Shown here piece by piece: positions 21,139 through 64,000 of a stretch of 64,000 bases of DNA. Both the position numbers and the translations under genes were made by a program. Under the pieces are notes generated by a model. It saw only the letters and a list, made by a program, of their open reading frames with translations, had not been told where the DNA came from and did no database searches. This DNA comes from Adineta vaga. Lineage: Eukaryota; Animalia; Rotifera. The DNA is taken from NCBI GenBank assembly GCA_021613535.1, contig CP075493.1:6758001-6822000 (forward strand), read 5' to 3'. The stretch's first letter is position 1. Every line of letters begins with the position of its first letter.

Positions 21139-24100
21139 ATGGATGTCAAATATATTGGCGGAGATGAACCATGGACACTTCCGTTTGGTGATCATTTTAA
21201 TTCATCAAATGAACCATATAAATCAAGTAGATAAATCATATTTGATTAAGAACATAATCATATAATGAAAATTTTTTGTTCAGATTTAATTTCATCTAGT
21301 GAATTAGAGATTATTGCACGTCGACATGGTTTTGAACCATTATATTCTGCAAGTGAAAAACAATCTCAACCGAAATTTCCTTTTACAAATGATAATCTTC
21401 AATGGATGAATACAGGAATTCTATTTACTGACAAAACTATCGAACCAAATATGAGTGGAACTCATTATACAGGTTTGTGTTTAAGAAATAGTTCTAAAGC
21501 TAAATGAAATCTTGTTTAGATTTCTCGGATAATCATGGACATACATTTTGTTATTTATGTTCCATTAATCAACATCATCATGAACATACGAAACCTCGAG
21601 ATCAATCACGAGTATAAATTCATTCAATTAAATCTTGTATTCTAATTTATTCGTTTGTTTAGAGACGAAAACTTATTCCATATAATAATCCAAAAGCACT
21701 ACGAGTTCAATCAGCATCGAAAGATCGACCTATATCTGCTTCATCAACAACAAATTCTACTTCTTATCGATTTATTGTTCGAACTGGTACAAGAGAAAAT
21801 AGTGGAACTCGAGCACAAGTATTCAAAATACCTCATGTCGTTTTGGTTCTCTCTCTAGTATTGTTGTTTACTTCTTCTAGGTATTTTTGTATATGTACGG
21901 AACAGAAAATGATTGGACTTCTATTAATTTGCGTGCACGTGCAAAACAAACATGTGATGGCTTTCCAAGTGGTTCAATACGAACATTTTGTTTGAAAGGA
22001 CCTGATATTGGTCAATTGCATCATTTGAATGTTAATGTAAATCCATTATGTTCTGAATGTTTTATTTTAATGAATCTTTCCTTAGCTTGTCGGTGCTCGT
22101 TCAGATAAAGAATGGTATCTCAATGAAATTGAAATAACGAATTTAAATACTTCAAAAACATGGTTATGTGAATTCAATTGTTGGTTACCTAAGACAGATA
22201 ATACAGAACCACAGTACCATGTAAAACCAACGAATGAACTAACATCAGATAACTTATGCGGTAAATTTTCATTGTTTTTATTTTCCTTGAATAGTCCTTG
22301 ATTTTGTTTTTTAGTTTATATTCTACAAATTCGTACTGGTGGAAAAGCATTTGCTGGAACAGATTCGACAATTCAAGTGACAGTTAAAGGATCGAAGAGT
22401 CAAACACGACAGTTGACATTGACAAGTAGTCAAGCGAATTTATTTGAACAGAATCAATTGGATACATTTGCTATTGCTGGATGGGATCTAGGAGATTTAT
22501 TAGAAATAACGTATGGAAATTAGATGTCTTTCGAAATATAATAGAAATACTATTATTTGTTTTGTTAGAGTCAAATCGGATCGAACTCAAACGGCTGCTG
22601 ATTGGGATTTAAAAGAAATGGCAATGTGGAAAATCTTACCAGATAATGATCATAAACAATTTCAAGTTTATTTTCCATTTAATACTTGGCTCGGAAAGAA
22701 AGTTAGTACATTAGAAGCAAAACGAGAAAAATATCCCATAACTGATCAACATATAAGAGGTATTTTGTTTCATTTTCATAACAGTTTTTCATATGCTATA
22801 TTACAATGGTGTTTCAGGCCCAACATGTTATCATATCATAGTCAAAACTGGAGATACGAGGGGTGCTGGTACTGATGCTAATGTTTTTATTATCATTTAT
22901 GGTGAAAGTGGACGAACTGTAATTCATCATTTAGATAATATTGGAAAAAATGATTTTGAACGAAAATCTTCATCAGAATTTACGGTAAGTGAAAAAATAG
23001 AGTCTTTGCATTGAGTATCTTTTCTAAACGATAACTTAATTGTCTATTATGTACATTTATTCTGTAGATTATGGATATTGATGTTGGTGATATTAATCGA
23101 ATTAAAATTTGGCATGATAATACTAAACCTGGAGCTGGTTGGTTTCTTGATACAGTTATAATTCGAAAAAAACATTCAACATGTCGCCCTATTTCCAACA
23201 GTTTCATTCAACGTGTGACACAGATCAGTAAAGTTTTATATCGTGAAGCCCGTGAACAAATGAAAAAGAATTATAATGTTCGATCATCTTCATTGAAAGA
23301 AAATGATCCACGTTCATCTGATCGTAAAAGTACTTCACTGAAAAGAGTCACTTTCGATAAAGACAGTATTGGCTCTCAAGATGAACGATTTGATTATGAT
23401 ACACAACGACAGAAAAATAAACAAACAAGTATCGATTCAAAACGTCACAAAGATCAATTGTCGAATGAATCAATATCGGGGCATTTCGATCATCGAGCTA
23501 CATGGATATCTTCGCATACTTTTACTAACAATAGATGGCAAATTAAATCTATTGAAGAACAAAAATCCTTTAATATAGATCAATCAGTACGTTCATCACT
23601 TTTATCGGATCGTTTAGCAATCGACAGCAAAATCAAAACATCGACTCATGATCGAGATGATGATGTCTACGAATTTACAGCAAATCGTTGGTTGGCTAAG
23701 GATGAGCATGATGGTAAACTTGAAGTCTCTCTATCACCAAAAGCAAAACAACTATCTACTGATACGAAAAATGAAAGCAAATCAACTACTGATACAACAA
23801 CCGATTTGAATAAGCACAAATTACGTCCAACATCTAGCTCATCTGTCGATATACCTAATGACGATCAAAATACTAAACGTTCATCACAGCGGTCATCGGG
23901 TGCTTTGAGTCAATTAAAAGAATCATTTCTTGATAAATATCAACGGCCATTATCACCTAGTCAAACTACGAAATCACCTCGTGATAAGACTGAACGTACC
24001 GTACCATCAGCGAGTGAAAAAGATTTACCAGCAAAATCATCAGGTCAATCCACATATGGTTCTCAATCAGCAGTAAAATCTTTGATCGATAGAACTTCAT

Positions 24101-25129
24101 CAGATTTTCGTACTCAACATTCACCATCACCGCGATTCGACCAGAGAGCGAACAGTCCAGTGTCCGGCAATCGAGATTTGCCACCTCGTACGTCGGCTGA
24201 ACCATCATCAGTATTAAAATCAGCGAACGAACGAGATTCAAGAACAAAATTATCAGGTCAATCCACATATGGTTCTCAATCAGCAGTAAAATCTTTGATC
24301 GATAGAACTTCATCAGATTTGCGGAATCAACATTCACCATCACCGCGATTCGACCAGAGAATCAGTAGTCCATTGCCCAGTAATCGAGATTTAGCACCTC
24401 GAACATCGGCTGAATCATCATTTGTACCATCAACAAACGAACGAGATTCAAGAGGAAAACTATCAGGTCAATCTACACATGGTTCCCAATCAGCAATTAA
24501 ATCTTTGATCGATAGAACTTCATCAGATTTTCGTACCCAACATTCACCATCACCCTCAAGATTCGACCAGAGAGCGAGTAGTCCAGTGCCCAGTAATCGA
24601 GATTTAGCACCTCGAACATCGGCTGAACCATCATCAGTATTAAAATCAACAAACGAACGAGATTCAAGAACAAAATTATCAGGTCAATCTACACATGGTT
24701 CTCAATCAGCAATTAAATCATTGATTGATAAAACATCATCCGATTTGCGTAACCAACACTCACCGTCACCGCGATTGGACCAGAGAATCAGTAGTCCAGT
24801 GCCTAGTATTCGAGATTTAGCACCTCGAACATCGGCTGAACCGTTATCTGTATTAAAATCATCAAACGAACGAGATTCAAGAACAAAATTATCAGGTCAA
24901 TCTACACATGGTTCGCAATCATCAGATTTGCGTAACCAGCATTCACCATCACCGCGATTCGACCAGAGAGTGAGTAGTCCAGCGCCCATTAATCGAGATT
25001 TACCACCTCATCGATCCACACGAAGTAAGATCAGTTAATTGTATAACATAACAACGTTATTTATTTTGATCCTCTTTAGATCAAGTATATAGTTCCGCAT
25101 ATGGGACGATACCATCGGATAATTTCTAA
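21139..25129 (+). CDS. Multi-PLAT/LH2-domain protein (LOXHD1-like domains) with a Ser/Arg-rich tandem-repeat tail
   Basis: Three PLAT modules (YRFIVRTG...SGTRAQV; IRTGGKAFAGTDS...FEQNQLDTF; YHIIVKTGDTRGAGTDANVFIIIYGESG...DVGDINRIKIWHDN...GWFLDTV), followed by repeats. Confidence 0.75.
24040..25010 (+). repeat. Coding tandem repeat, five copies of about 213 bp (70-72 aa)
   Basis: TCAGGTCAATC starts at 24040, 24253, 24463, 24679 and 24892. Unit SGQSTxGSQSAxKSLIDRTSSDxRxQHSPSPRFDQRxSSPxPxNRDLxPRTSAEPSSVLKSxNERDSRTKL. Confidence 0.95.
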
Positions 25130-57325: not shown

Positions 57326-58307
57326 CACGTTTGATAACAGTGAAAGAAGAGAAAATAGACAAGTTAGAATGTTTACACGCTGTTTTTGTTTGGAGATATA
57401 CCGAAAGAATAATGAAACTTTCGTCTTATTTTAACCTGCATTTAAGTAAGAGATAGTTGCGGTCAAGGGCGACGTGTCCATCTATTTCTATGTCCTTACA
57501 AAAGAAAAGAAAGGAAAAAGTATAGATACATAAGCGCACACGACATCAATTTGTTAATCATCGATCGACGTTAGATACTATACTATTTACTGACTATAAG
57601 GTACTATAACGGCTGCACATACTTATGAATCACTCAAGCAATTATTCAGCCAAAAAAGGATTAGTCAATGTAATAATAACCAAACTCTATCTTCTCGTTA
57701 ACCTCGATTGTGAACCTAAATAGGATCGATAAGTATATAAAATAAAACTATTTCATTTGAGAAAATAAACATGATCAAATATGTACTAGTCGTACATTTA
57801 AAAACGAATGCGAAATGGATTATTTACAATCATTTTTAACGAAGTATGCACAAATATCGTACATGTCAACATGGATATAGTATTTGATTAATAGGGTGTG
57901 GGTGTGAAAAGAAGAGACTATCGATACCTATCCTCAACGATTTCCTTTTATGATTGAACTTTTGTTGAATATCATGTGCAAAAGTATCCTTTCTTAAAAT
58001 GAACTCTTTTGTGAAACGAAAAAATTACTAATGAAGAATACGTATCTTGAGAGTATACTGACACTCACAATCATACACAGCAGACGAAACTCCATCTCAA
58101 CACATACATTAACGCCATCTTTCTGCATAAACTAACTATTCGCTTCTGTTGAAATCTTCAGACTTCATTATCTTTTATCTTTTTTCATTTTTTCATTAAC
58201 AAAAATACAATACAATACTTTCACTAAAGCGAATTTCTTCTCGTAACAAACAAAATATATTCAATACCTTGTATTCTCAACAAACTTCAGTGGAATCTAA
58301 GGCGAAT

Positions 58308-61300
58308 ATGTACACATTTACAACATTACCTATAGAACTTGTCTATCGAATTTTGGATCATCTGACTGATTTTACACTATTTAGTTCAATGCAAAATGTC
58401 TGCAAACGTTTTAATCAAATTCTGAACATTTATCATACATATCAAGTAAGTTTCCCACGTGCTTTACCTATTTTCTCGTCTGTTCAAGCACACACGAGTT
58501 TACTCAAAGAAAAAACAAATTTAACAATTTCGAAAAATTTTCCACAAGAGAATCAACCACCACCTTTCCTCACTCACACCTGCTCTTTTCTATCCATGCC
58601 CATAGAATATACCCAGGTCGATCAATCGGATTCCTGGTGGCGAAATCATTTTGGATTCTATCGGTTCTGAATCCAACATTGGATCCTATAGTTTCCAACA
58701 AACCAATACCGACGGATCCGACAGGTGGCCCTATGACCACAATGAAATAAAGCTAAAAAGACCGCTGATATAATTTGCAGCTTCCGGCGGAAATTTTACT
58801 CACGTAATCCGCCACAGATCCATCACCAGGAATCTGACAGGAATTTGTACGAACATTGGATCGCATAGGGTCCTATCCGATCCGTCGATCTGGGTACATC
58901 TTGTTCAACCTGCACTCATGTGTCGAACAAGAATAAAACCGCACAATTATGAATCACCTTTCCCACTTCAAACAAACGTCTCTATTGCAACTGCTAAACA
59001 ATGCAACACCTATCTGTAAAAACCACTGAATAAAATAAACTGAACTCTTTTACATTGCGTCACGACTCAATACTATCCCTAGCAAACCAACTATAAGAAT
59101 CACTATGCAAAACTATTCGAAATCAAAAATTATCATAACATAGAGTACAGTAGTCACCTTTCTCATTTGCCGCTTCGAAGATTAACTCAGTAATAACTAG
59201 AGAAGAAATGACATTTCATTTCGCCCAATGAATCCAAACGAAATACTTTCTGCACTCTTTCACACATCACCGCCACACCTTTTGTATAATGATATATCTA
59301 GTTCAAAAACGTCAATCTAAAGTTTCGATTCTCTTACGTACATTTTCGAAAAAAATACTCTATTCATAGACACTCACCGCACTAAATCTGTGGCACAATC
59401 GAATCGGTGATCAAGGAGCCCAACATATTGGTGATGCCTTGCAAACAAACACAGTAATATTCATTCGAGCCTCACCTAATTGACAGGTTCGTCCTCTGTC
59501 TTGTTTATAGACACTTACCACACTAAATCTCGGGTGGAATCAAATCAGTGAGAAGGGAGCACAACATATTGGTGATGCCTTGCGAACAAACACGGTAATC
59601 TTCATCCGCCCTTCACCTAATTGACATATCCATGCTCTCTCTTTTTCTCGTTTATAGACACTCACCACACTAGATCTCCGAGACAATCAATTCGGCCATC
59701 AAGGAGCACAACATATTGGTGATGCCTTGCGAACAAACACGGTAATCTTCATCCGCTTTTCACCTAATTGACAGGTTCGTCCTCTGTCTTGTTTATAGAC
59801 ACTCACCACACTAAATCTCGAGTGGAATCAAATCAGTGAGAAAGGAGCCCAACATATTGGTGATGCCTTGCGAACAAACACAGTAATATTCATTCGAGCC
59901 TCACCTAATTGACAGGTTCGTCCTCTGTCTTGTTTATAGACACTTACCACACTAAATCTCGGGTGGAATCAAATCGGCCATCAAGGAGCACAACATATTG
60001 GTGATGCCTTGCGAACAAACACGGTAATCTTCATCCGCCCTTCACCTAATTGACATATCCATGCTCTCTTTTTCTCTCGTTTATAGACACTCACCACACT
60101 AGATCTCCGAGACAATCAAATCGGCCATCAAGGAGCACAACATATTGGTGATGCCTTGCGAACAAACACGGTAATCGTCATCCGAGTCTCACCTAATTGA
60201 CACATCCGTGCTCTCTCTTTCTCTCGTTTATAGACACTCACCACACTAAATCTCGGGTGGAATCAAATCAGTGAGAAGGGAGCACAACATATTGGTGATG
60301 CCTTGCGAACAAATACGGTAATCTTCATCCGCCCTTCACCTAATTGACATATCCATGCTCTCTTTTTCTCTCGTTTATAGACACTCACCACACTAGATCT
60401 CCGAGACAATCAAATCGCCCATCAAGGAGCACAACATATTGGTGATGCCTTGCGAACAAACACAGTAATATTCATCCGAGCCTCACCTAATTGACAGGTT
60501 CGTCCTCTGTCTTGTTTATAGACACTTACCACACTAAATCTCGAGTGGAATCAAATCAGTGAGAAAGGAGCCCAACATATTGGTGATGCCTTACGAACAA
60601 ACACCGTAATATTCATTCGCCATTTACCTAATTGACATATCCATGCTCTCTCTTTTTCTCGTTTATAGACACTCACCACACTAAATCTCGGGTGGAATCA
60701 AATCGGCCATCAAGCAGCACAACATATTGGTGATGCCTTGCGAACAAATACGGTAATCTTCATCCGAGCCTCACCTAATTGACACATCCGTGCTCTCTCT
60801 TTCTCTCGTTTATAGACACTCACCACACTAGATCTCCGACGCAGTCAAATCAGTGAGAAAGGAGCCCAACATATTGGTGATGCCTTGCGAACAAACACAG
60901 TAATATTCATTCGAGCCTCACCTAATTGACAGGTTCGTCCTCTGTCTTGTTTATAGACACTTACCACACTAAATCTCGGGTGGAATCAAATCGGCCATCA
61001 AGGAGCACAACATATTGGTGATGCCTTGCGAACAAACACGGTAATCTTCATCCGCCCTTCACCTAATTGGCACATCCATGCTCTCTCTTTTTCTCTCGTT
61101 TATAGACACTCACCACACTAGATCTCCGAGACAATCAAATCGGCCATCAAGGAGCACAACATATTGGTGATGCCTTGCGAACAAACACGGTAATCTTCAT
61201 CCGAGTCTCACCTAATTGACACATCCATGCTCTCCCTTTCTCTCGTTTATAGACACTCACCACACTAAATCTCGGGTGGAATCAAATCAGTGAGAAGGGA

Positions 61301-61492
61301 GCACAACATATTGGTGATGCCTTGCGAACAAACACGGTAATCTTCATCCGCCCTTCTCTTAATTGACATATCCATGCTCTCTTTTTCTCTCGTTTATAGA
61401 CACTCACCACACTAGATCTCGGGCGAAATGAAATCGGCCATCAAGGAGCAGAAGACCTTGAAAATACTTTAGGAAACAGGTTGAGATTGTAG
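58308..61492 (+). CDS. F-box + 15 ribonuclease-inhibitor/NLR-type LRR protein, about 468 aa, 16 exons
   Basis: Exon 1 58308-58445 is an F-box (TLPIELVYRILDHL...MQNVCKRFNQIL), phase 0. 84-nt LRR exons start at 59370, 59511, 59658, 59799, 59940, 60087, 60234, 60381, 60522, 60669, 60816, 60957, 61106 and 61253; terminal exon 61400-61492 ends in TAG. All junctions are GT-AG and no exon has an in-frame stop. Confidence 0.9.
58612..58894. mobile_element. MITE (283 bp) in intron 1 of the F-box/LRR gene
   Basis: TA on both flanks. TIR CCCAGGTCGATCAATCGGAT / ATCCGATCCGTCGATCTGGG (16 of 20). Internal inverted GATTCCTGGTG / CACCAGGAATC and duplicated AACATTGGATC. GC-rich. Confidence 0.65.
59370..61450 (+). 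repeat. Tandem array of 15 exon+intron units, 141-149 bp period
   Basis: CAACATATTGGTGATGCCTT recurs in 14 units; most introns share CACCTAATTGACA and all end in TTTATAG. Confidence 0.97.
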
Positions 61493-63764
61493 TTTGGTTT
61501 CGAGGAACACTATTTTGTAGTCTTTTTTCTGGAGAATATTTTTAGAGGAAAGTGATGGGTAGAAAGATGAATGCTCATTCTGCTTGGAAGTCGTATTAAT
61601 CGGTTGATAGCGTGTTTTGTTTTGAACTCATGATGTCCGTCTGTGAAAGGTGGTTTTTCATCTGAGTTGTTGATTTGTGTATGTCCCAGAAAGCGGTATC
61701 ACGTTATATCTTTCGAAACTATCTGGTTTTAAGAGAATGTCTTCTGAAAAATTTTCAATAATTGAAAAGTTGTGAAGAAGAAGGATGGCCATCGGTGTGT
61801 CTTAGAAGTCTTTTAATGGGTCAGCTGCATTCATTCTCATCACTGATCTATTGCGAACGACTAGGAAACTATATCTTAAATATTTTGTTGTGATGAAAAA
61901 CGGAGTACAATATACGTTCGGACCTTATTTTGAATATTTCTCGTAATAGAGTTGAGTTTAATGTATGAGTGCATCGCAAAACTTTGCTGTATTCGGAACG
62001 CTAGAGATTTGTGGTTGACGTCATTATATAATGGATGACGAGTTTTACAGCTTGATTTAGTAGCTGCTTGGATTTGACGTTTAATGTCTAATGGTAGAAA
62101 TATGTTTTGTGTTCGTACATGTTCAAACATAAAAAAGAAAATTTTCAAGAAAAGAGTACATCTCAGTCTCAATTAACAAATGTGTTGAGACACAAAGTAG
62201 GATATAAATCGCATCTGAATGCATTTCCCGATGTATTCGAGTTTCAATGAAATGCGGCGAGATGCATTTGTTAATACAAAGAGTGCTTCATGTTTATATG
62301 GTAACTGGTACTTATATTCCATTCCTATTCTCTCATTGACATTCAGAGAATTACAAGAGTAGCAATGATTCGCGAGTGGTGAAGTAGTTCTATCTCGAGT
62401 TCACACATATTTCTTTTCGAATACATTCATCATCGGTGTCGACGAACCCGACTGTACTAGATCTATTGAAATTTTTCTTGGTGTATACGTTCAATTAAAT
62501 ACACATGATAATGAACATTTAGTTGTTGAATATACATCCATAATAATTTATTTGTCTATAATATGGTGATTTTGTTTACTTGAGAAATTGACGTTAACTG
62601 CCTTTCTAAATCCATCAATTGTCATGTAGATTCTTTGAAAATATACCAGCAACGCATATATTATGACGTATTTTTCAATGAACCAGTGGCATATTGATCA
62701 GTGACTTTTTGACTAGGAATATATTGATGGAGTATATAATTTTCGTATTTACATTTAATGGATATTTCCTTTCATATAATATTAGTATTTTAACAAATCA
62801 TATTTAACATTAGTCGAAAAGAGATGGCATAATTAAGGATAAACTTCGTTTGAATTGATTTGATCAATTTTGATTGAAATGTTCTAAATATATTTGTAAA
62901 AAATATCGAACTCATATAATATAGTCATCTATAACCTTTGAACAATTTCACAGCATCCATACAATGAGAATTCAAATGAGTTTTGGATCATAAACAAGAT
63001 AAAAATGAAGACATTTTCAAGAGTCATTAGAAAGATGATCTTATAAATTTTAAAATAATCGACTGTAAACGAATATAATCGATTGTCATACTTAGATAAA
63101 TAACTATTGAATCCATACAAAAAATTTAATACACCCTTTTTTTTAATTTTTTAATACTTGATGTTTCCAGATAAAAACTTTCTCTTCTATCAGAAAAATA
63201 TATATTTTGACCAAAATCATAGAGTATATGATTGTTCGTTCTTTTTTCAATGTTTTAAATTCTAATGAAAACAAATAACAATCTTGATGTCTTGTGTAGA
63301 AGAAGTTTTTCTTTTCTACTTTCACGGCAAAAGAGATAAAACTTCCATATTTAGACTTACGAAATGAGAACAAAATTAAAAATTAACGTTTCGTAATAAT
63401 CTCATCTACATTTCCACTCATTTTTTGTTATTTATAGACAAGCAGTAATTTATTAGAGCAACTCTATCTTCATTTAATTATCGTAAATGAAGTAGCTGTC
63501 TAATTCAACTTCGAGTATAAATAACGATGTTCAAAAAGCGCTCTTAGTCATTATTTTTTTATAGATATAATGATTTAGACTTTATTACTCATAAATAAAA
63601 TTTGTAAGAAGAGTCATATATGTGCAGAATTTTGAAGTATAATCGCATATAGATAAAAGAAAATCTATTTCTATTCCATGGAAAAAATCTAGCTCAAGTT
63701 CCGTGATTTATTTTCTAACTGATATCAAATAGCTGAATGTGCATTTATATTCGAATTTGAATCC

Positions 63765-64000
63765 GGCAGCTGATGATAATATTGTTTCAACTGTTTTCGA
63801 GGAACACTGTAAGGTGCTCTCTGTTGGTCGGTCAGATCAACGCCTTTCATAGTGATATTGTAGTCGTGCACGCATACGAGTATTTCAGTTTGTTTATTTC
63901 TTTTATGAATAATCGTCACGTCATCATCGTGGTAGGTTGACAATATTTTAACATATTTCTTATCCGTTCATTTCAATGCCATTGATCTCTTTTAACAACG
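63765..64000 (-). mobile_element. Degenerate piggyBac transposase fragment (continues beyond the window end)
   Basis: MALK*TDKKYVKILSTYH...CVHDYNITMKGVDLTDQ...YSVPRK matches piggyBac W-x-D-x-x-x-V-x-x-LST-x-H ... DYN-x-x-M-x-GVD-x-x-DQ. The conserved Trp codon is TGA, and similarity is lost after YY. Confidence 0.85.

What the first reader, a model, noticed from the sequence alone, without database searches (positions are those of the whole stretch)
58308..61492. Hidden F-box-LRR gene built from one-repeat-per-exon, phase-0 cassettes: candidate modular variable receptor
Seen: the 2.1-kb array that looks like a minisatellite is 14 exons of exactly 84 nt plus a terminal exon. Each encodes one LRR (consensus TLTTL[N/D]LxxNQI[SEK/GHQ]GAQHIGDALRTNT) and is separated by 57-65 nt GT-AG introns. 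All are phase 0 and join in frame to a phase-0 F-box exon, and length changes occur only in introns. Established: F-box domains recruit substrates to SKP1-CUL1 ubiquitin ligases, and 28-aa RI/NLR-type LRRs bind ligands on the concave face. Inference: any cassette can be gained, lost, swapped or skipped without breaking frame (14 optional exons allow 2^14 in-frame combinations in principle). This would suit a rapidly re-programmable intracellular recognise-and-degrade system, conceptually like lamprey VLRs or the one-exon-per-LRR genes of Tetrahymena. I am not aware of this being described in this kind of animal, but could not check.
Basis: partly seen in the sequence, partly recalled or inferred. 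Interest (0 to 1): 0.92.

Follow-up and report, generated by a model that had tools for sequence, protein, structure and literature searches.

The report
Rotifer F-box gene with one-LRR exons
A real, intact and weakly transcribed gene of the bdelloid rotifer Adineta vaga joins an F-box to 15 leucine-rich repeats, each in its own exon; it is one diverged copy of a family of dozens whose ligand-facing residues vary fastest, so it is probably a fast-evolving target-recognition arm of the ubiquitin system, not a lone hidden gene or a shown "variable receptor".

Summary
There is an F-box exon (58308-58445), a 924-nt intron, 14 exons of exactly 84 nt, and a 93-nt terminal exon ending at 61492. All exons are phase 0 and all introns are GT-AG.

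It is not a lone hidden gene. The genome is Adineta vaga. It holds at least 40 copies of this F-box exon at 86-93% identity, and 150-261 F-box exons of the wider type. All 19 intact paralogs parsed have the same build, with 1-23 LRR exons. Public gene models in five bdelloid species splice F-box to LRR at the same point.

Across 196 cassettes, codons 6, 8, 9, 11 and 14 (the concave face) vary about 2.4 times more than the introns. Framework codons and the F-box are under purifying selection. Arrays grow by local block duplication and are reordered between close paralogs.

So germline diversification of an F-box/RI-type-LRR adaptor family is supported. Combinatorial exon skipping, somatic assembly and an immune role are not shown.

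The window's copy is an outlier fragment. The other copies lie in a dispersed 8.4-kb-plus-array unit with sharp ends, and how that unit spreads is unknown.

The scan's first stage flagged this family 18 times elsewhere in this genome.

The parts
57898..58307 (+). Upstream region shared with the paralogs, including the 5' UTR. RNA-like contigs begin near 58208.
   Evidence: Homology to all paralogs starts sharply at 57898, at 85-88% identity. Contigs of three RNA-like runs match 58208/58219-58398 with 0-1 mismatch.
58308..58445 (+). Exon 1: F-box, 46 codons, phase 0, GTAAGT donor.
   Evidence: Pfam F-box-like E 1.4e-5 and F-box E 2.4e-4, both above the curated cut-offs. pN/pS is 0.32 against 16 paralogs.
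58446..59369 (+). Intron 1 (924 nt). It is homologous to the ~668-nt intron 1 of the paralogs, with stops in all frames.
   Evidence: Alignment with 16 paralog introns. No RNA-like coverage at 58584-59309. The exon 1 to exon 2 junction itself was not seen in reads.
58610..58884 (.). Dispersed ~260-bp repeat inserted in intron 1 (MITE-like, with short inverted arms).
   Evidence: At least 43 matches genome-wide at 74-86% identity. Absent from the paralogs' intron 1. Inverted arms found.
59370..61336 (+). Fourteen 84-nt phase-0 exons, one 28-residue RI-type LRR each, separated by 57/63/65-nt GT-AG introns.
   Evidence: Units 4-7 are about 96-98% identical to units 11-14, a 7-unit block duplication. 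Loose ends at exon ends 59594, 60464, 60899 and 61336 continue with ACACTCACC, the start of an exon.
61400..61492 (+). Terminal exon: last LRR plus C-terminal cap, 30 codons and TAG.
   Evidence: It is homologous to the conserved terminal exon (..RKYLRNTFGNRLTL*) of the paralogs.
61695..63486 (.). Non-coding downstream region shared with the paralogs. Homology ends sharply at 63486.
   Evidence: 81-90% identity to every paralog tested. No ORF of 100 aa or more and no RNA-like coverage.

Best explanation
Window 58308-61492 is a functional, germline-encoded gene of Adineta vaga. Counting exon by exon, its product has 468 residues: an N-terminal F-box followed by 15 ribonuclease-inhibitor-type leucine-rich repeats.

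It belongs to a bdelloid-wide, strongly expanded family of F-box/LRR adaptors. The F-box most likely docks the protein onto SKP1-CUL1 (inferred). The concave face of the LRR solenoid most likely binds the target to be ubiquitinated (inferred).

Because every repeat is one 84-nt phase-0 exon with a short, equally repeated intron, unequal recombination between exon+intron units adds, removes and reorders repeats without breaking the frame (shown at the germline level). Selection keeps the scaffold and the F-box constant while favouring change at five ligand-facing positions (shown as a pattern of diversity).

The window's copy is an old, diverged fragment of the family's repeat unit. It expanded its own array in place and is transcribed at a low level.
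For: Gene anatomy and open frames.

Family size: at least 40 F-box exons at 86-93% identity, at least 362 cassette matches, and 150 scored of 261 candidate F-box exons of the type.

Same build in 19 of 20 parsed paralogs, with 1-23 cassettes, 55-59-nt introns and a conserved terminal exon. 15 of 20 paralogs are fully intact.

Public spliced models join ..RYQ to TLT.. in A. vaga (I4U23_017691), A. ricciae, A. steineri, Rotaria magnacalcarata and R. socialis. The A. ricciae and A. steineri loci have the same long first intron (734-756 nt) and 57-58-nt introns.

Selection pattern:
- Hypervariable codons: pN 0.35, pS 0.21, intron distance 0.14.
- Framework codons: pN/pS 0.31.
- F-box: pN/pS 0.25-0.32.

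Local growth and reordering: 177 of 264 cassettes have their nearest relative in the same array. All 14 of the window's do. L019 and L023 share near-identical cassettes in a different order.

The LRRs are of RI/NLRP type.

In bdelloids the same LRR module is also fused to RING/B-box, U-box-kinase and ADP-ribosyltransferase domains in public annotations. This fits a recognition module coupled to protein-modifying effectors.

Transcription: exact-match contigs over the 5' UTR and F-box exon in three RNA-like runs from three studies, none in most of intron 1, and splice-type loose ends at four predicted exon ends.
Against: - No read or contig shows the exon 1 to exon 2 junction of this locus.
- One low-depth contig of run X1 runs through the donor into intron 1 (58417-58567).
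- The short contigs on the LRR exons cannot be assigned to this copy rather than to paralogs.
- The runs are only guessed to be RNA.
- SKP1 binding is untested.
- A profile of the F-box exon found no solved F-box chain by sequence.
- The hypervariable codons were chosen from the same data on which pN/pS was computed, and repeats that recombine violate the assumptions of pN/pS. The excess over intron diversity is therefore a pattern, not a formal test.
- The window's own array has only 9 distinct peptides in 14 cassettes, and its pN/pS at the variable codons is about 1.
- No target, phenotype or induction is known.
Confidence: 0.65

Rival explanations
1. The cassette array is used combinatorially within an individual, by regulated exon skipping or somatic rearrangement. 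One gene would then yield many receptor variants, in the manner of VLRs.
For: All 15 internal exon boundaries are phase 0 and of equal length, so any skip stays in frame. In NLRP3 the same design does yield functional splice isoforms (PMC11352923).
Against: No skipped junction was seen. The two long 'joints' in RNA-like runs carry foreign or unknown letters between the sides and look like paralog contigs (tables 5 and 5c). The germline gene is complete, unlike an unassembled VLR locus. The family reaches diversity through many germline copies. Short-read contigs could not have shown isoforms anyway.
Confidence: 0.07
2. The window's copy is a relic. It would be a truncated, decaying fragment of a dispersed repeat unit, whose open frames reflect only recent in-place duplication of a few cassettes, and which has no function of its own.
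For: It keeps only the inner part of the unit, 57898-63486, while the other copies share about 1.5 kb more upstream and 3.4 kb more downstream. It is the most diverged copy, at 81-93% identity. A dispersed repeat sits in intron 1. Its array is low in diversity and partly 96-98% self-identical. Depth in RNA-like runs is low, and one contig reads through the donor.
Against: The F-box exon and terminal exon are intact after 7-13% divergence, with pN/pS 0.32. Framework codons within the array show pN/pS 0.21. All 15 donor and acceptor pairs are canonical. Exact-match transcribed contigs cover the 5' UTR and exon 1 in three studies.
Confidence: 0.15
3. The N-terminal 46 residues are not a working F-box. 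The proteins would act as stoichiometric RI-like binders or inhibitors, or as scaffolds, without ubiquitination.
For: Pfam scores are only just above the cut-offs, and some relatives fall below them. A family profile found no solved F-box protein by sequence. The LRRs resemble ribonuclease inhibitor, which works by binding alone.
Against: Two independent Pfam F-box models hit 17 and 14 of 20 diverse members, and no other family hits. The LPxE..YRIL and VCxRxN motifs are invariant or nearly so across the family. The domain is under purifying selection. The genome keeps several SKP1 genes.
Confidence: 0.1

Closest known systems
FBXL-type SCF substrate receptors (SKP2/FBXL family)
   Same: An N-terminal F-box followed directly by a C-terminal LRR solenoid. 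The expected role is as the exchangeable substrate-binding subunit of SKP1-CUL1 ligases.
   Different: Canonical FBXL repeats are the shorter cysteine-containing type (my own knowledge). Here they are 28-residue RI/NLRP-type repeats. There are dozens of near-identical copies per genome, one exon per repeat, and hypervariable concave residues.
Ectocarpus ROCO and other 'type I LRR exon' genes (Zambounis et al. 2012, PMC3341825; also PMC11378527)
   Same: Each LRR is a single exon of fixed length in phase 0. Repeat number and order differ between recent duplicates. There are signs of diversifying selection on exposed residues. They too were proposed as candidate pathogen receptors.
   Different: The exons are 72 nt (24 residues), against 84 nt (28 residues) here. 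They are fused to ROC-COR GTPase or kinase domains, not to an F-box. Ectocarpus shows intact LRR exons on the non-coding strand inside introns; I saw none here. It is a brown alga, not an animal.
NLRP3 / ribonuclease inhibitor LRR exon modules (PMC11352923; Hoss et al. 2019, cited there)
   Same: RI-type 28/29-residue repeats. Exon borders always fall at the same repeat position and in frame, which allows functional isoforms by exon skipping.
   Different: 171-bp exons hold two repeats each. They are single-copy genes with fixed repeat number, and have a NACHT effector domain rather than an F-box.
Expanded, positively selected F-box families of Caenorhabditis (PMC8120010, PMC8665587; Thomas 2006 from my own knowledge)
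   Same: Lineage-specific expansion to hundreds of F-box genes. There is strong diversity in the substrate-binding part and constraint on the F-box. The proposed role is in recognising foreign or variable proteins.
   Different: The nematode families use FTH/FBA2 domains, not LRR arrays, and have no cassette-exon architecture.
Lamprey variable lymphocyte receptors
   Same: An LRR solenoid whose diversity comes from cassette-level exchange.
   Different: VLR genes are incomplete in the germline and are assembled somatically from flanking cassettes. Here the germline gene is complete, and no somatic change is shown.
Penelope-mediated dispersal of intron-containing host genes in A. vaga (Arkhipova et al. 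2013, PMC3846280)
   Same: Multigene families, LRR included, are amplified above TE copy numbers. Intron-containing genes are copied to new sites as units with defined ends.
   Different: The 8.4-kb unit here has no pLTR-like direct repeats, no consistent target-site duplication and no hammerhead ribozyme match.

Membership tests
F-box proteins (SCF substrate receptors) | A ~45-residue F-box motif recognised by the curated profiles | tested here: met
   PF12937 scores 25.2 bits (cut-off 24.3) and PF00646 scores 21.3 bits (cut-off 20.5) for the window's exon. 17 and 14 of 20 family members hit these models and nothing else.
F-box proteins (SCF substrate receptors) | Binding of SKP1 through the F-box | not testable with these tools
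   Needs co-IP, yeast two-hybrid or a solved complex. SKP1 genes are present in the genome.
F-box proteins (SCF substrate receptors) | A separate C-terminal protein-interaction domain | tested here: met
   15 LRR_6 repeats, tested exon by exon. Public relatives score LRR_6 at E 1e-23 to 1e-35.
Canonical FBXL subfamily | Cysteine-containing (CC-type, ~26-residue) LRRs as in SKP2 | tested here: not met
   The repeat is exactly 28 residues. The 60 best solved matches of a relative's LRR region are ribonuclease inhibitor, NLRP, NOD2-like, LRRC34 and GALA chains. No SKP2/FBXL chain is among them.
RI-like (RNI) LRR superfamily | 28/29-residue repeats xLxxLxLxxNxI..G...L...L with an asparagine ladder | tested here: met
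   L2, L5, L7, N10, I12, A17, I20 and L24 are at least 88% conserved over 196 cassettes. PDB matches to RI reach E 1e-30.
Cassette-exon, shuffling LRR receptors (Ectocarpus ROCO type) | One LRR per equal-length phase-0 exon, with number and order differing between recent duplicates | tested here: met
   All 264 exons are 84 nt. Paralogs carry 1-23 exons. L019 and L023 are non-colinear with near-identical cassettes.
Cassette-exon, shuffling LRR receptors (Ectocarpus ROCO type) | A ROC-COR or NB-ARC signalling domain | tested here: not met
   Only the F-box exon, LRR exons and a 30-codon cap lie between start and stop. This is an analogue, not a member.
VLR-like somatically assembled receptors | An incomplete germline gene completed by copying flanking cassettes in somatic cells | tested here: not met
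   The germline gene is complete and open from ATG to TAG. No rearranged joints were seen in the DNA run. Somatic DNA was not specifically examined.
Known transposable-element classes (for the paralogs' 8.4-kb unit) | Terminal inverted or direct repeats, target-site duplication, and a transposase or reverse-transcriptase ORF | tested here: not met
   Self-comparison finds no terminal repeats. Six copies with both flanks show no consistent duplication. There are no Pfam hits in the unit's ORFs and no ribozyme match. Sharp common ends with unique flanks are present.

The most novel reading that the evidence does not exclude
The family would be a germline cassette-shuffling recognition repertoire that spreads through the genome as a self-contained 8-11-kb mobile unit of a so far undescribed kind. 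In other words, it would be a receptor gene that travels with its own dispersal sequences. It would supply an ancient asexual animal with a fast-renewing set of 'recognise and ubiquitinate' specificities against pathogens, foreign DNA products or transposons, possibly widened further by cassette skipping at the RNA level.
Probability: 0.15. Interest if true: 0.85.

Novelty: new variant of a known kind. Interest (0 to 1): 0.55.

Why it matters
Bdelloid rotifers have no known adaptive immunity, have been asexual for a very long time, and face specialised fungal pathogens and much foreign DNA.

A family of dozens to hundreds of F-box adaptors could be a major part of their intracellular defence or surveillance. 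Its binding face is rebuilt by in-frame cassette duplication and shows its greatest diversity exactly where ligands are contacted. It would be a third independent case of cassette-exon LRR diversification, after brown algae and, somatically, lampreys.

The finding also gives a clean system for studying how exon-intron repeat units drive protein evolution by unequal recombination. The sharp-ended 8-11-kb unit bears on how bdelloid gene families reach copy numbers above those of their transposons.

If the family turns out to be ordinary SCF adaptors with endogenous targets, the architecture remains a neat but minor curiosity.

Tried and rejected
1. Complex prediction of an A. vaga SKP1 exon (L046, residues 1-92 of the open frame) with the F-box exon gave no verdict: score 0.32 against a mark of 0.34. 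It counts neither for nor against binding.

2. AlphaFold2 of the F-box exon with a 20-row alignment gave mean pLDDT 68.6. That is too weak for a fold search, so none was run.

3. A profile of the F-box exon against PDB sequences gave no F-box chain at E up to 1.

4. Rfam on a whole paralog unit and on its 5' end gave no hammerhead ribozyme or other family. The Penelope-pLTR idea therefore has no support.

5. A search for LTRs, TIRs and target-site duplications at the unit's ends found nothing consistent. There is one possible 11-bp duplication in one copy, and a 16-nt subterminal inverted match.

6. ORFs inside the unit gave no Pfam hit.

7. I looked for hidden exons in intron 1. There are stops in all frames, and conservation is no higher than neutral.

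8. I looked for spliced transcripts among database proteins. Logan and ENA hits were unrelated RI-like proteins. P0002 and P0029 had no contig on record.

9. The empty-site test for the unit could not be finished.

10. As the operators require, the spliced 468-residue model was never joined for any search, fold or family tool. Exons were searched one by one by reference, and public relatives stood in for the whole protein.

Full report
**What is in the sequence**

Tandem Repeats Finder reports a single array at 59366-61450, with period 147 and 14.4 copies.

Reading it as exons gives 14 exons of exactly 84 nt. Each is preceded by (T/C)ATAG and followed by GTAAT, and they are separated by introns of 57, 63 or 65 nt. 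Each exon is open and encodes one 28-residue repeat, TLTTL(N/D)LxxNQIxxxGAQHIGDALRTNT. A fifteenth repeat plus a short cap forms the terminal exon, 61400-61492, ending in TAG.

Upstream, 58308-58445 is a 46-codon exon with a GTAAGT donor. It passes the curated thresholds of both Pfam F-box models. Every LRR exon on its own hits LRR_6. All junctions are phase 0.

Exons were searched singly by reference, and public relatives were used in place of the whole protein.

**Which genome**

The assembly has 100.8 Mb in six contigs. Two of its contig lengths, 15,224,634 and 20,354,754, are exactly those of the contigs carrying the GenBank proteins I4U23_017691 and I4U23_013293 of Adineta vaga. The window is therefore chromosome 1 of the bdelloid rotifer A. 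vaga, at 6.76-6.82 Mb.

**It is a family, not a lone gene**

- The F-box exon has at least 40 further copies at 86-93% nucleotide identity, on all six chromosomes.
- The exon+intron cassette has at least 362 matches, lying next to those copies.
- A profile of the F-box exon finds 150 scored of 261 candidate exons, nearly all open.
- 27 of the 40 close copies lie within 3 Mb of a chromosome end, against 36% expected (p = 4e-5).

I fetched 20 paralogous loci.

- 19 have the same build: a 138-nt F-box exon with a GTAAGT donor, a first intron of about 668 nt, 1 to 23 exons of exactly 84 nt with introns of 55-59 nt, and a conserved 30-codon terminal exon.
- One copy has a stop in the F-box exon and no detected LRR exon.
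- Four have an early stop in the terminal exon.
- The other 15 are intact.

The scan's first stage had flagged the same family 18 times elsewhere in this genome. One of those notes, a '22-cassette' gene 5.39 Mb upstream, is my locus L023. There I count 21 exons plus the terminal one.

**The family is older than the species and is already annotated**

Public gene models join the F-box exon directly to the first LRR (..RYQ|TLT..) in A. vaga itself (I4U23_017691) and in A. ricciae, A. steineri, Rotaria magnacalcarata and R. socialis. Many are named 'F-box domain-containing protein' by UniProt.

The A. ricciae and A. steineri loci show the same anatomy, including a long first intron of 734-756 nt and 57-58-nt introns between 84-nt exons. 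The A. steineri assembly accession is identified in PMC7943196.

In the held literature I found no description of this architecture in rotifers. Arkhipova et al. 2013 note only that LRR families are among those strongly expanded in A. vaga (PMC3846280).

**Evidence of function**

Across 196 cassettes that align without gaps, I compared pairwise differences among classes of site.

| Site class | pN | pS | pN/pS |
|---|---|---|---|
| Framework codons | 0.045 | 0.146 | 0.31 |
| Codons 6, 8, 9, 11, 14 | 0.348 | 0.206 | 1.69 |
| Intron interior (distance) | 0.142 | | |

- Mean nucleotide diversity of the exons equals that of the introns (0.13), but it is distributed very unevenly.
- The five variable codons show non-synonymous differences 2.4 times the intron value.
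- In the RI-type repeat LxxLxLxxNxI, these positions lie on and just after the beta strand that lines the concave, ligand-binding face (established knowledge of ribonuclease inhibitor and NLR structures).
- The F-box exon shows pN/pS 0.25 among paralogs and 0.32 between the window's copy and the paralogs.

Two caveats apply. The variable codons were picked from the same data, and recombining repeats violate the model. This is a strong pattern rather than a formal test.

A relative's LRR region matches ribonuclease inhibitor, NLRP5/14/3 and NOD2-like chains at E 1e-38 to 1e-15. It does not match SKP2-type FBXL chains.

In bdelloid annotations the same LRR module is also fused to RING/B-box, kinase-U-box and ADP-ribosyltransferase domains. 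That fits a recognition module coupled to protein-modifying effectors.

**How the arrays change**

- In the window's array, units 4-7 are 96-98% identical to units 11-14, introns included. This is a recent 7-unit block duplication.
- Some introns are mosaics of the 57-nt and 63-nt types, switching at the conserved CACCTAATTGACA core.
- Over all loci, 177 of 264 cassettes have their nearest relative in the same array, 65 in another locus, and 22 tie.
- All 14 of the window's cassettes are nearest to each other, and 9-16% from any other locus.
- Close paralogs such as L019 and L023 hold cassettes 0-3% apart but in a different order.

Gain, loss and reordering of in-frame cassettes in the germline is thus supported.

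**Transcription**

Only assembled contigs of public runs could be laid.

- Three runs guessed to be RNA, from three studies, carry contigs that match 58208/58219-58398 exactly or with one mismatch. This stretch is locus-specific, since paralogs are at most 93% identical.
- They have no coverage of 58584-59309 or beyond 61609, whereas the DNA run covers everything.
- Short contigs ending at the predicted exon ends 59594, 60464, 60899 and 61336 continue with ACACTCACC.., the start of an exon. This is the signature of splicing at the predicted sites, though it cannot be assigned to this copy.
- The junction from 58445 to 59370 was not seen.
- One low-depth contig runs through the donor to 58567.
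- No clean exon-skipping joint was seen. The two long joints carry foreign or unknown letters between their sides.

**The window's copy is an outlier, and the others ride in a larger unit**

The window shares with the paralogs only 57898-63486, at 81-93% identity. Its first intron carries a ~260-bp dispersed repeat with at least 43 copies elsewhere.

The other copies are 92-96% identical to each other over a much longer stretch. The unit is 8,417 bp in a one-cassette copy (C4:692684-701100), which corresponds to about 11 kb with 20 cassettes. Its 5' end begins TTTATTCCCTTTTCTGAAAGAAAGGG.., about 1.9 kb upstream of the ATG. Its 3' end finishes ..GGATGAGCGTTACTTGT, about 5.5 kb downstream of the stop. 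Beyond these ends every copy has different flanking DNA.

I found no terminal repeats, no consistent target-site duplication, no protein domain in its other ORFs and no ribozyme. The mechanism of spread is therefore unknown.

Penelope-mediated copying of intron-containing genes, described for A. vaga, is a precedent for the phenomenon (PMC3846280). Its hallmarks, however, were not found here.

**Comparison with what is known**

- The domain pair is that of FBXL adaptors, but with RI-type rather than SKP2-type repeats.
- One LRR per equal-length phase-0 exon, with shuffling and diversifying selection, was described for Ectocarpus ROCO genes. There it prompted the same 'adaptive-like immunity' proposal (PMC3341825).
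- In-frame LRR exons that permit functional skipping are known in NLRP3 (PMC11352923).
- Expanded, positively selected F-box families are known in Caenorhabditis (PMC8120010).

What is new here is the combination:

- an F-box with a pure cassette array of RI-type repeats;
- occurrence in an animal;
- dozens of near-identical, mostly intact copies;
- dispersal as a sharp-ended unit.

I rate it a new variant of a known kind.

**Verdict**

- Observation: confirmed.
- Interpretation: partly supported. Germline modular diversification of a probable SCF adaptor family is supported. Combinatorial splicing, somatic assembly and an immune role are not shown.
- Interest is moderate to good for rotifer genomics and the evolution of recognition systems.

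Noticed in passing
L031:1085 to L027:8001 (G000 C4:692684-701100) and at least 13 other copies (L011-L030): The paralogous F-box-LRR genes lie in a dispersed repeat unit of 8.4 kb plus the array, 92-96% identical between copies. It has sharp common 5' and 3' ends and unique flanks. I found no LTR, TIR, target-site duplication, transposase or ribozyme. Copies are enriched within 3 Mb of chromosome ends (27 of 40, p = 4e-5).
   Followed up: partly
window 58610-58884: A ~260-bp dispersed, MITE-like repeat with short inverted arms is inserted in intron 1 of the window's copy only. It has at least 43 matches genome-wide at 74-86% identity, some of them inside or beside other F-box-LRR units.
   Followed up: partly
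L031:685-1060 (G000 C4:692284-692660): The DNA just upstream of one unit's 5' end is itself another repeat family. It has at least 41 copies at 77-91% identity (214 first-look candidates), many near chromosome ends.
   Followed up: no
window 63728-63943 (- strand): A 72-residue ORF fragment weakly matches the piggyBac-type transposase model DDE_Tnp_1_7 (E 4.7e-4, below the cut-off). It lies just beyond the end of the family homology.
   Followed up: partly
window 23071-25038 (+ strand; repeat at 24032-24925): A 655-residue open frame holds a coding tandem repeat of 213 nt (71 residues, 4.2 copies, 87% matches), rich in Ser, Pro and Arg. Its nature was not examined.
   Followed up: no
Public bdelloid proteins P0221, P0224, P0233, P0255, P0256, P0266: The same RI-type LRR module is annotated in bdelloids in fusion with RING/B-box (TRIM-like, including A. 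vaga I4U23_013293), kinase plus U-box, and NAD(P)-arginine ADP-ribosyltransferase domains. This suggests a wider LRR-plus-effector repertoire than the F-box family alone.
   Followed up: no
L046:1336-1713 (G000 C3:4378993-4379370): The best SKP1 gene of the genome has a 60-nt intron that stays in frame without a stop, so the exon pair reads as one 126-codon open frame. Eight Skp1-domain matches exist in the genome.
   Followed up: no
P0011 (Adineta ricciae, partial): An open frame in A. ricciae runs from a Tc1/mariner-type transposase fragment (Pfam PF01498 on record) straight into an F-box exon of this family. A transposon remnant therefore sits directly upstream of one family member.
   Followed up: no
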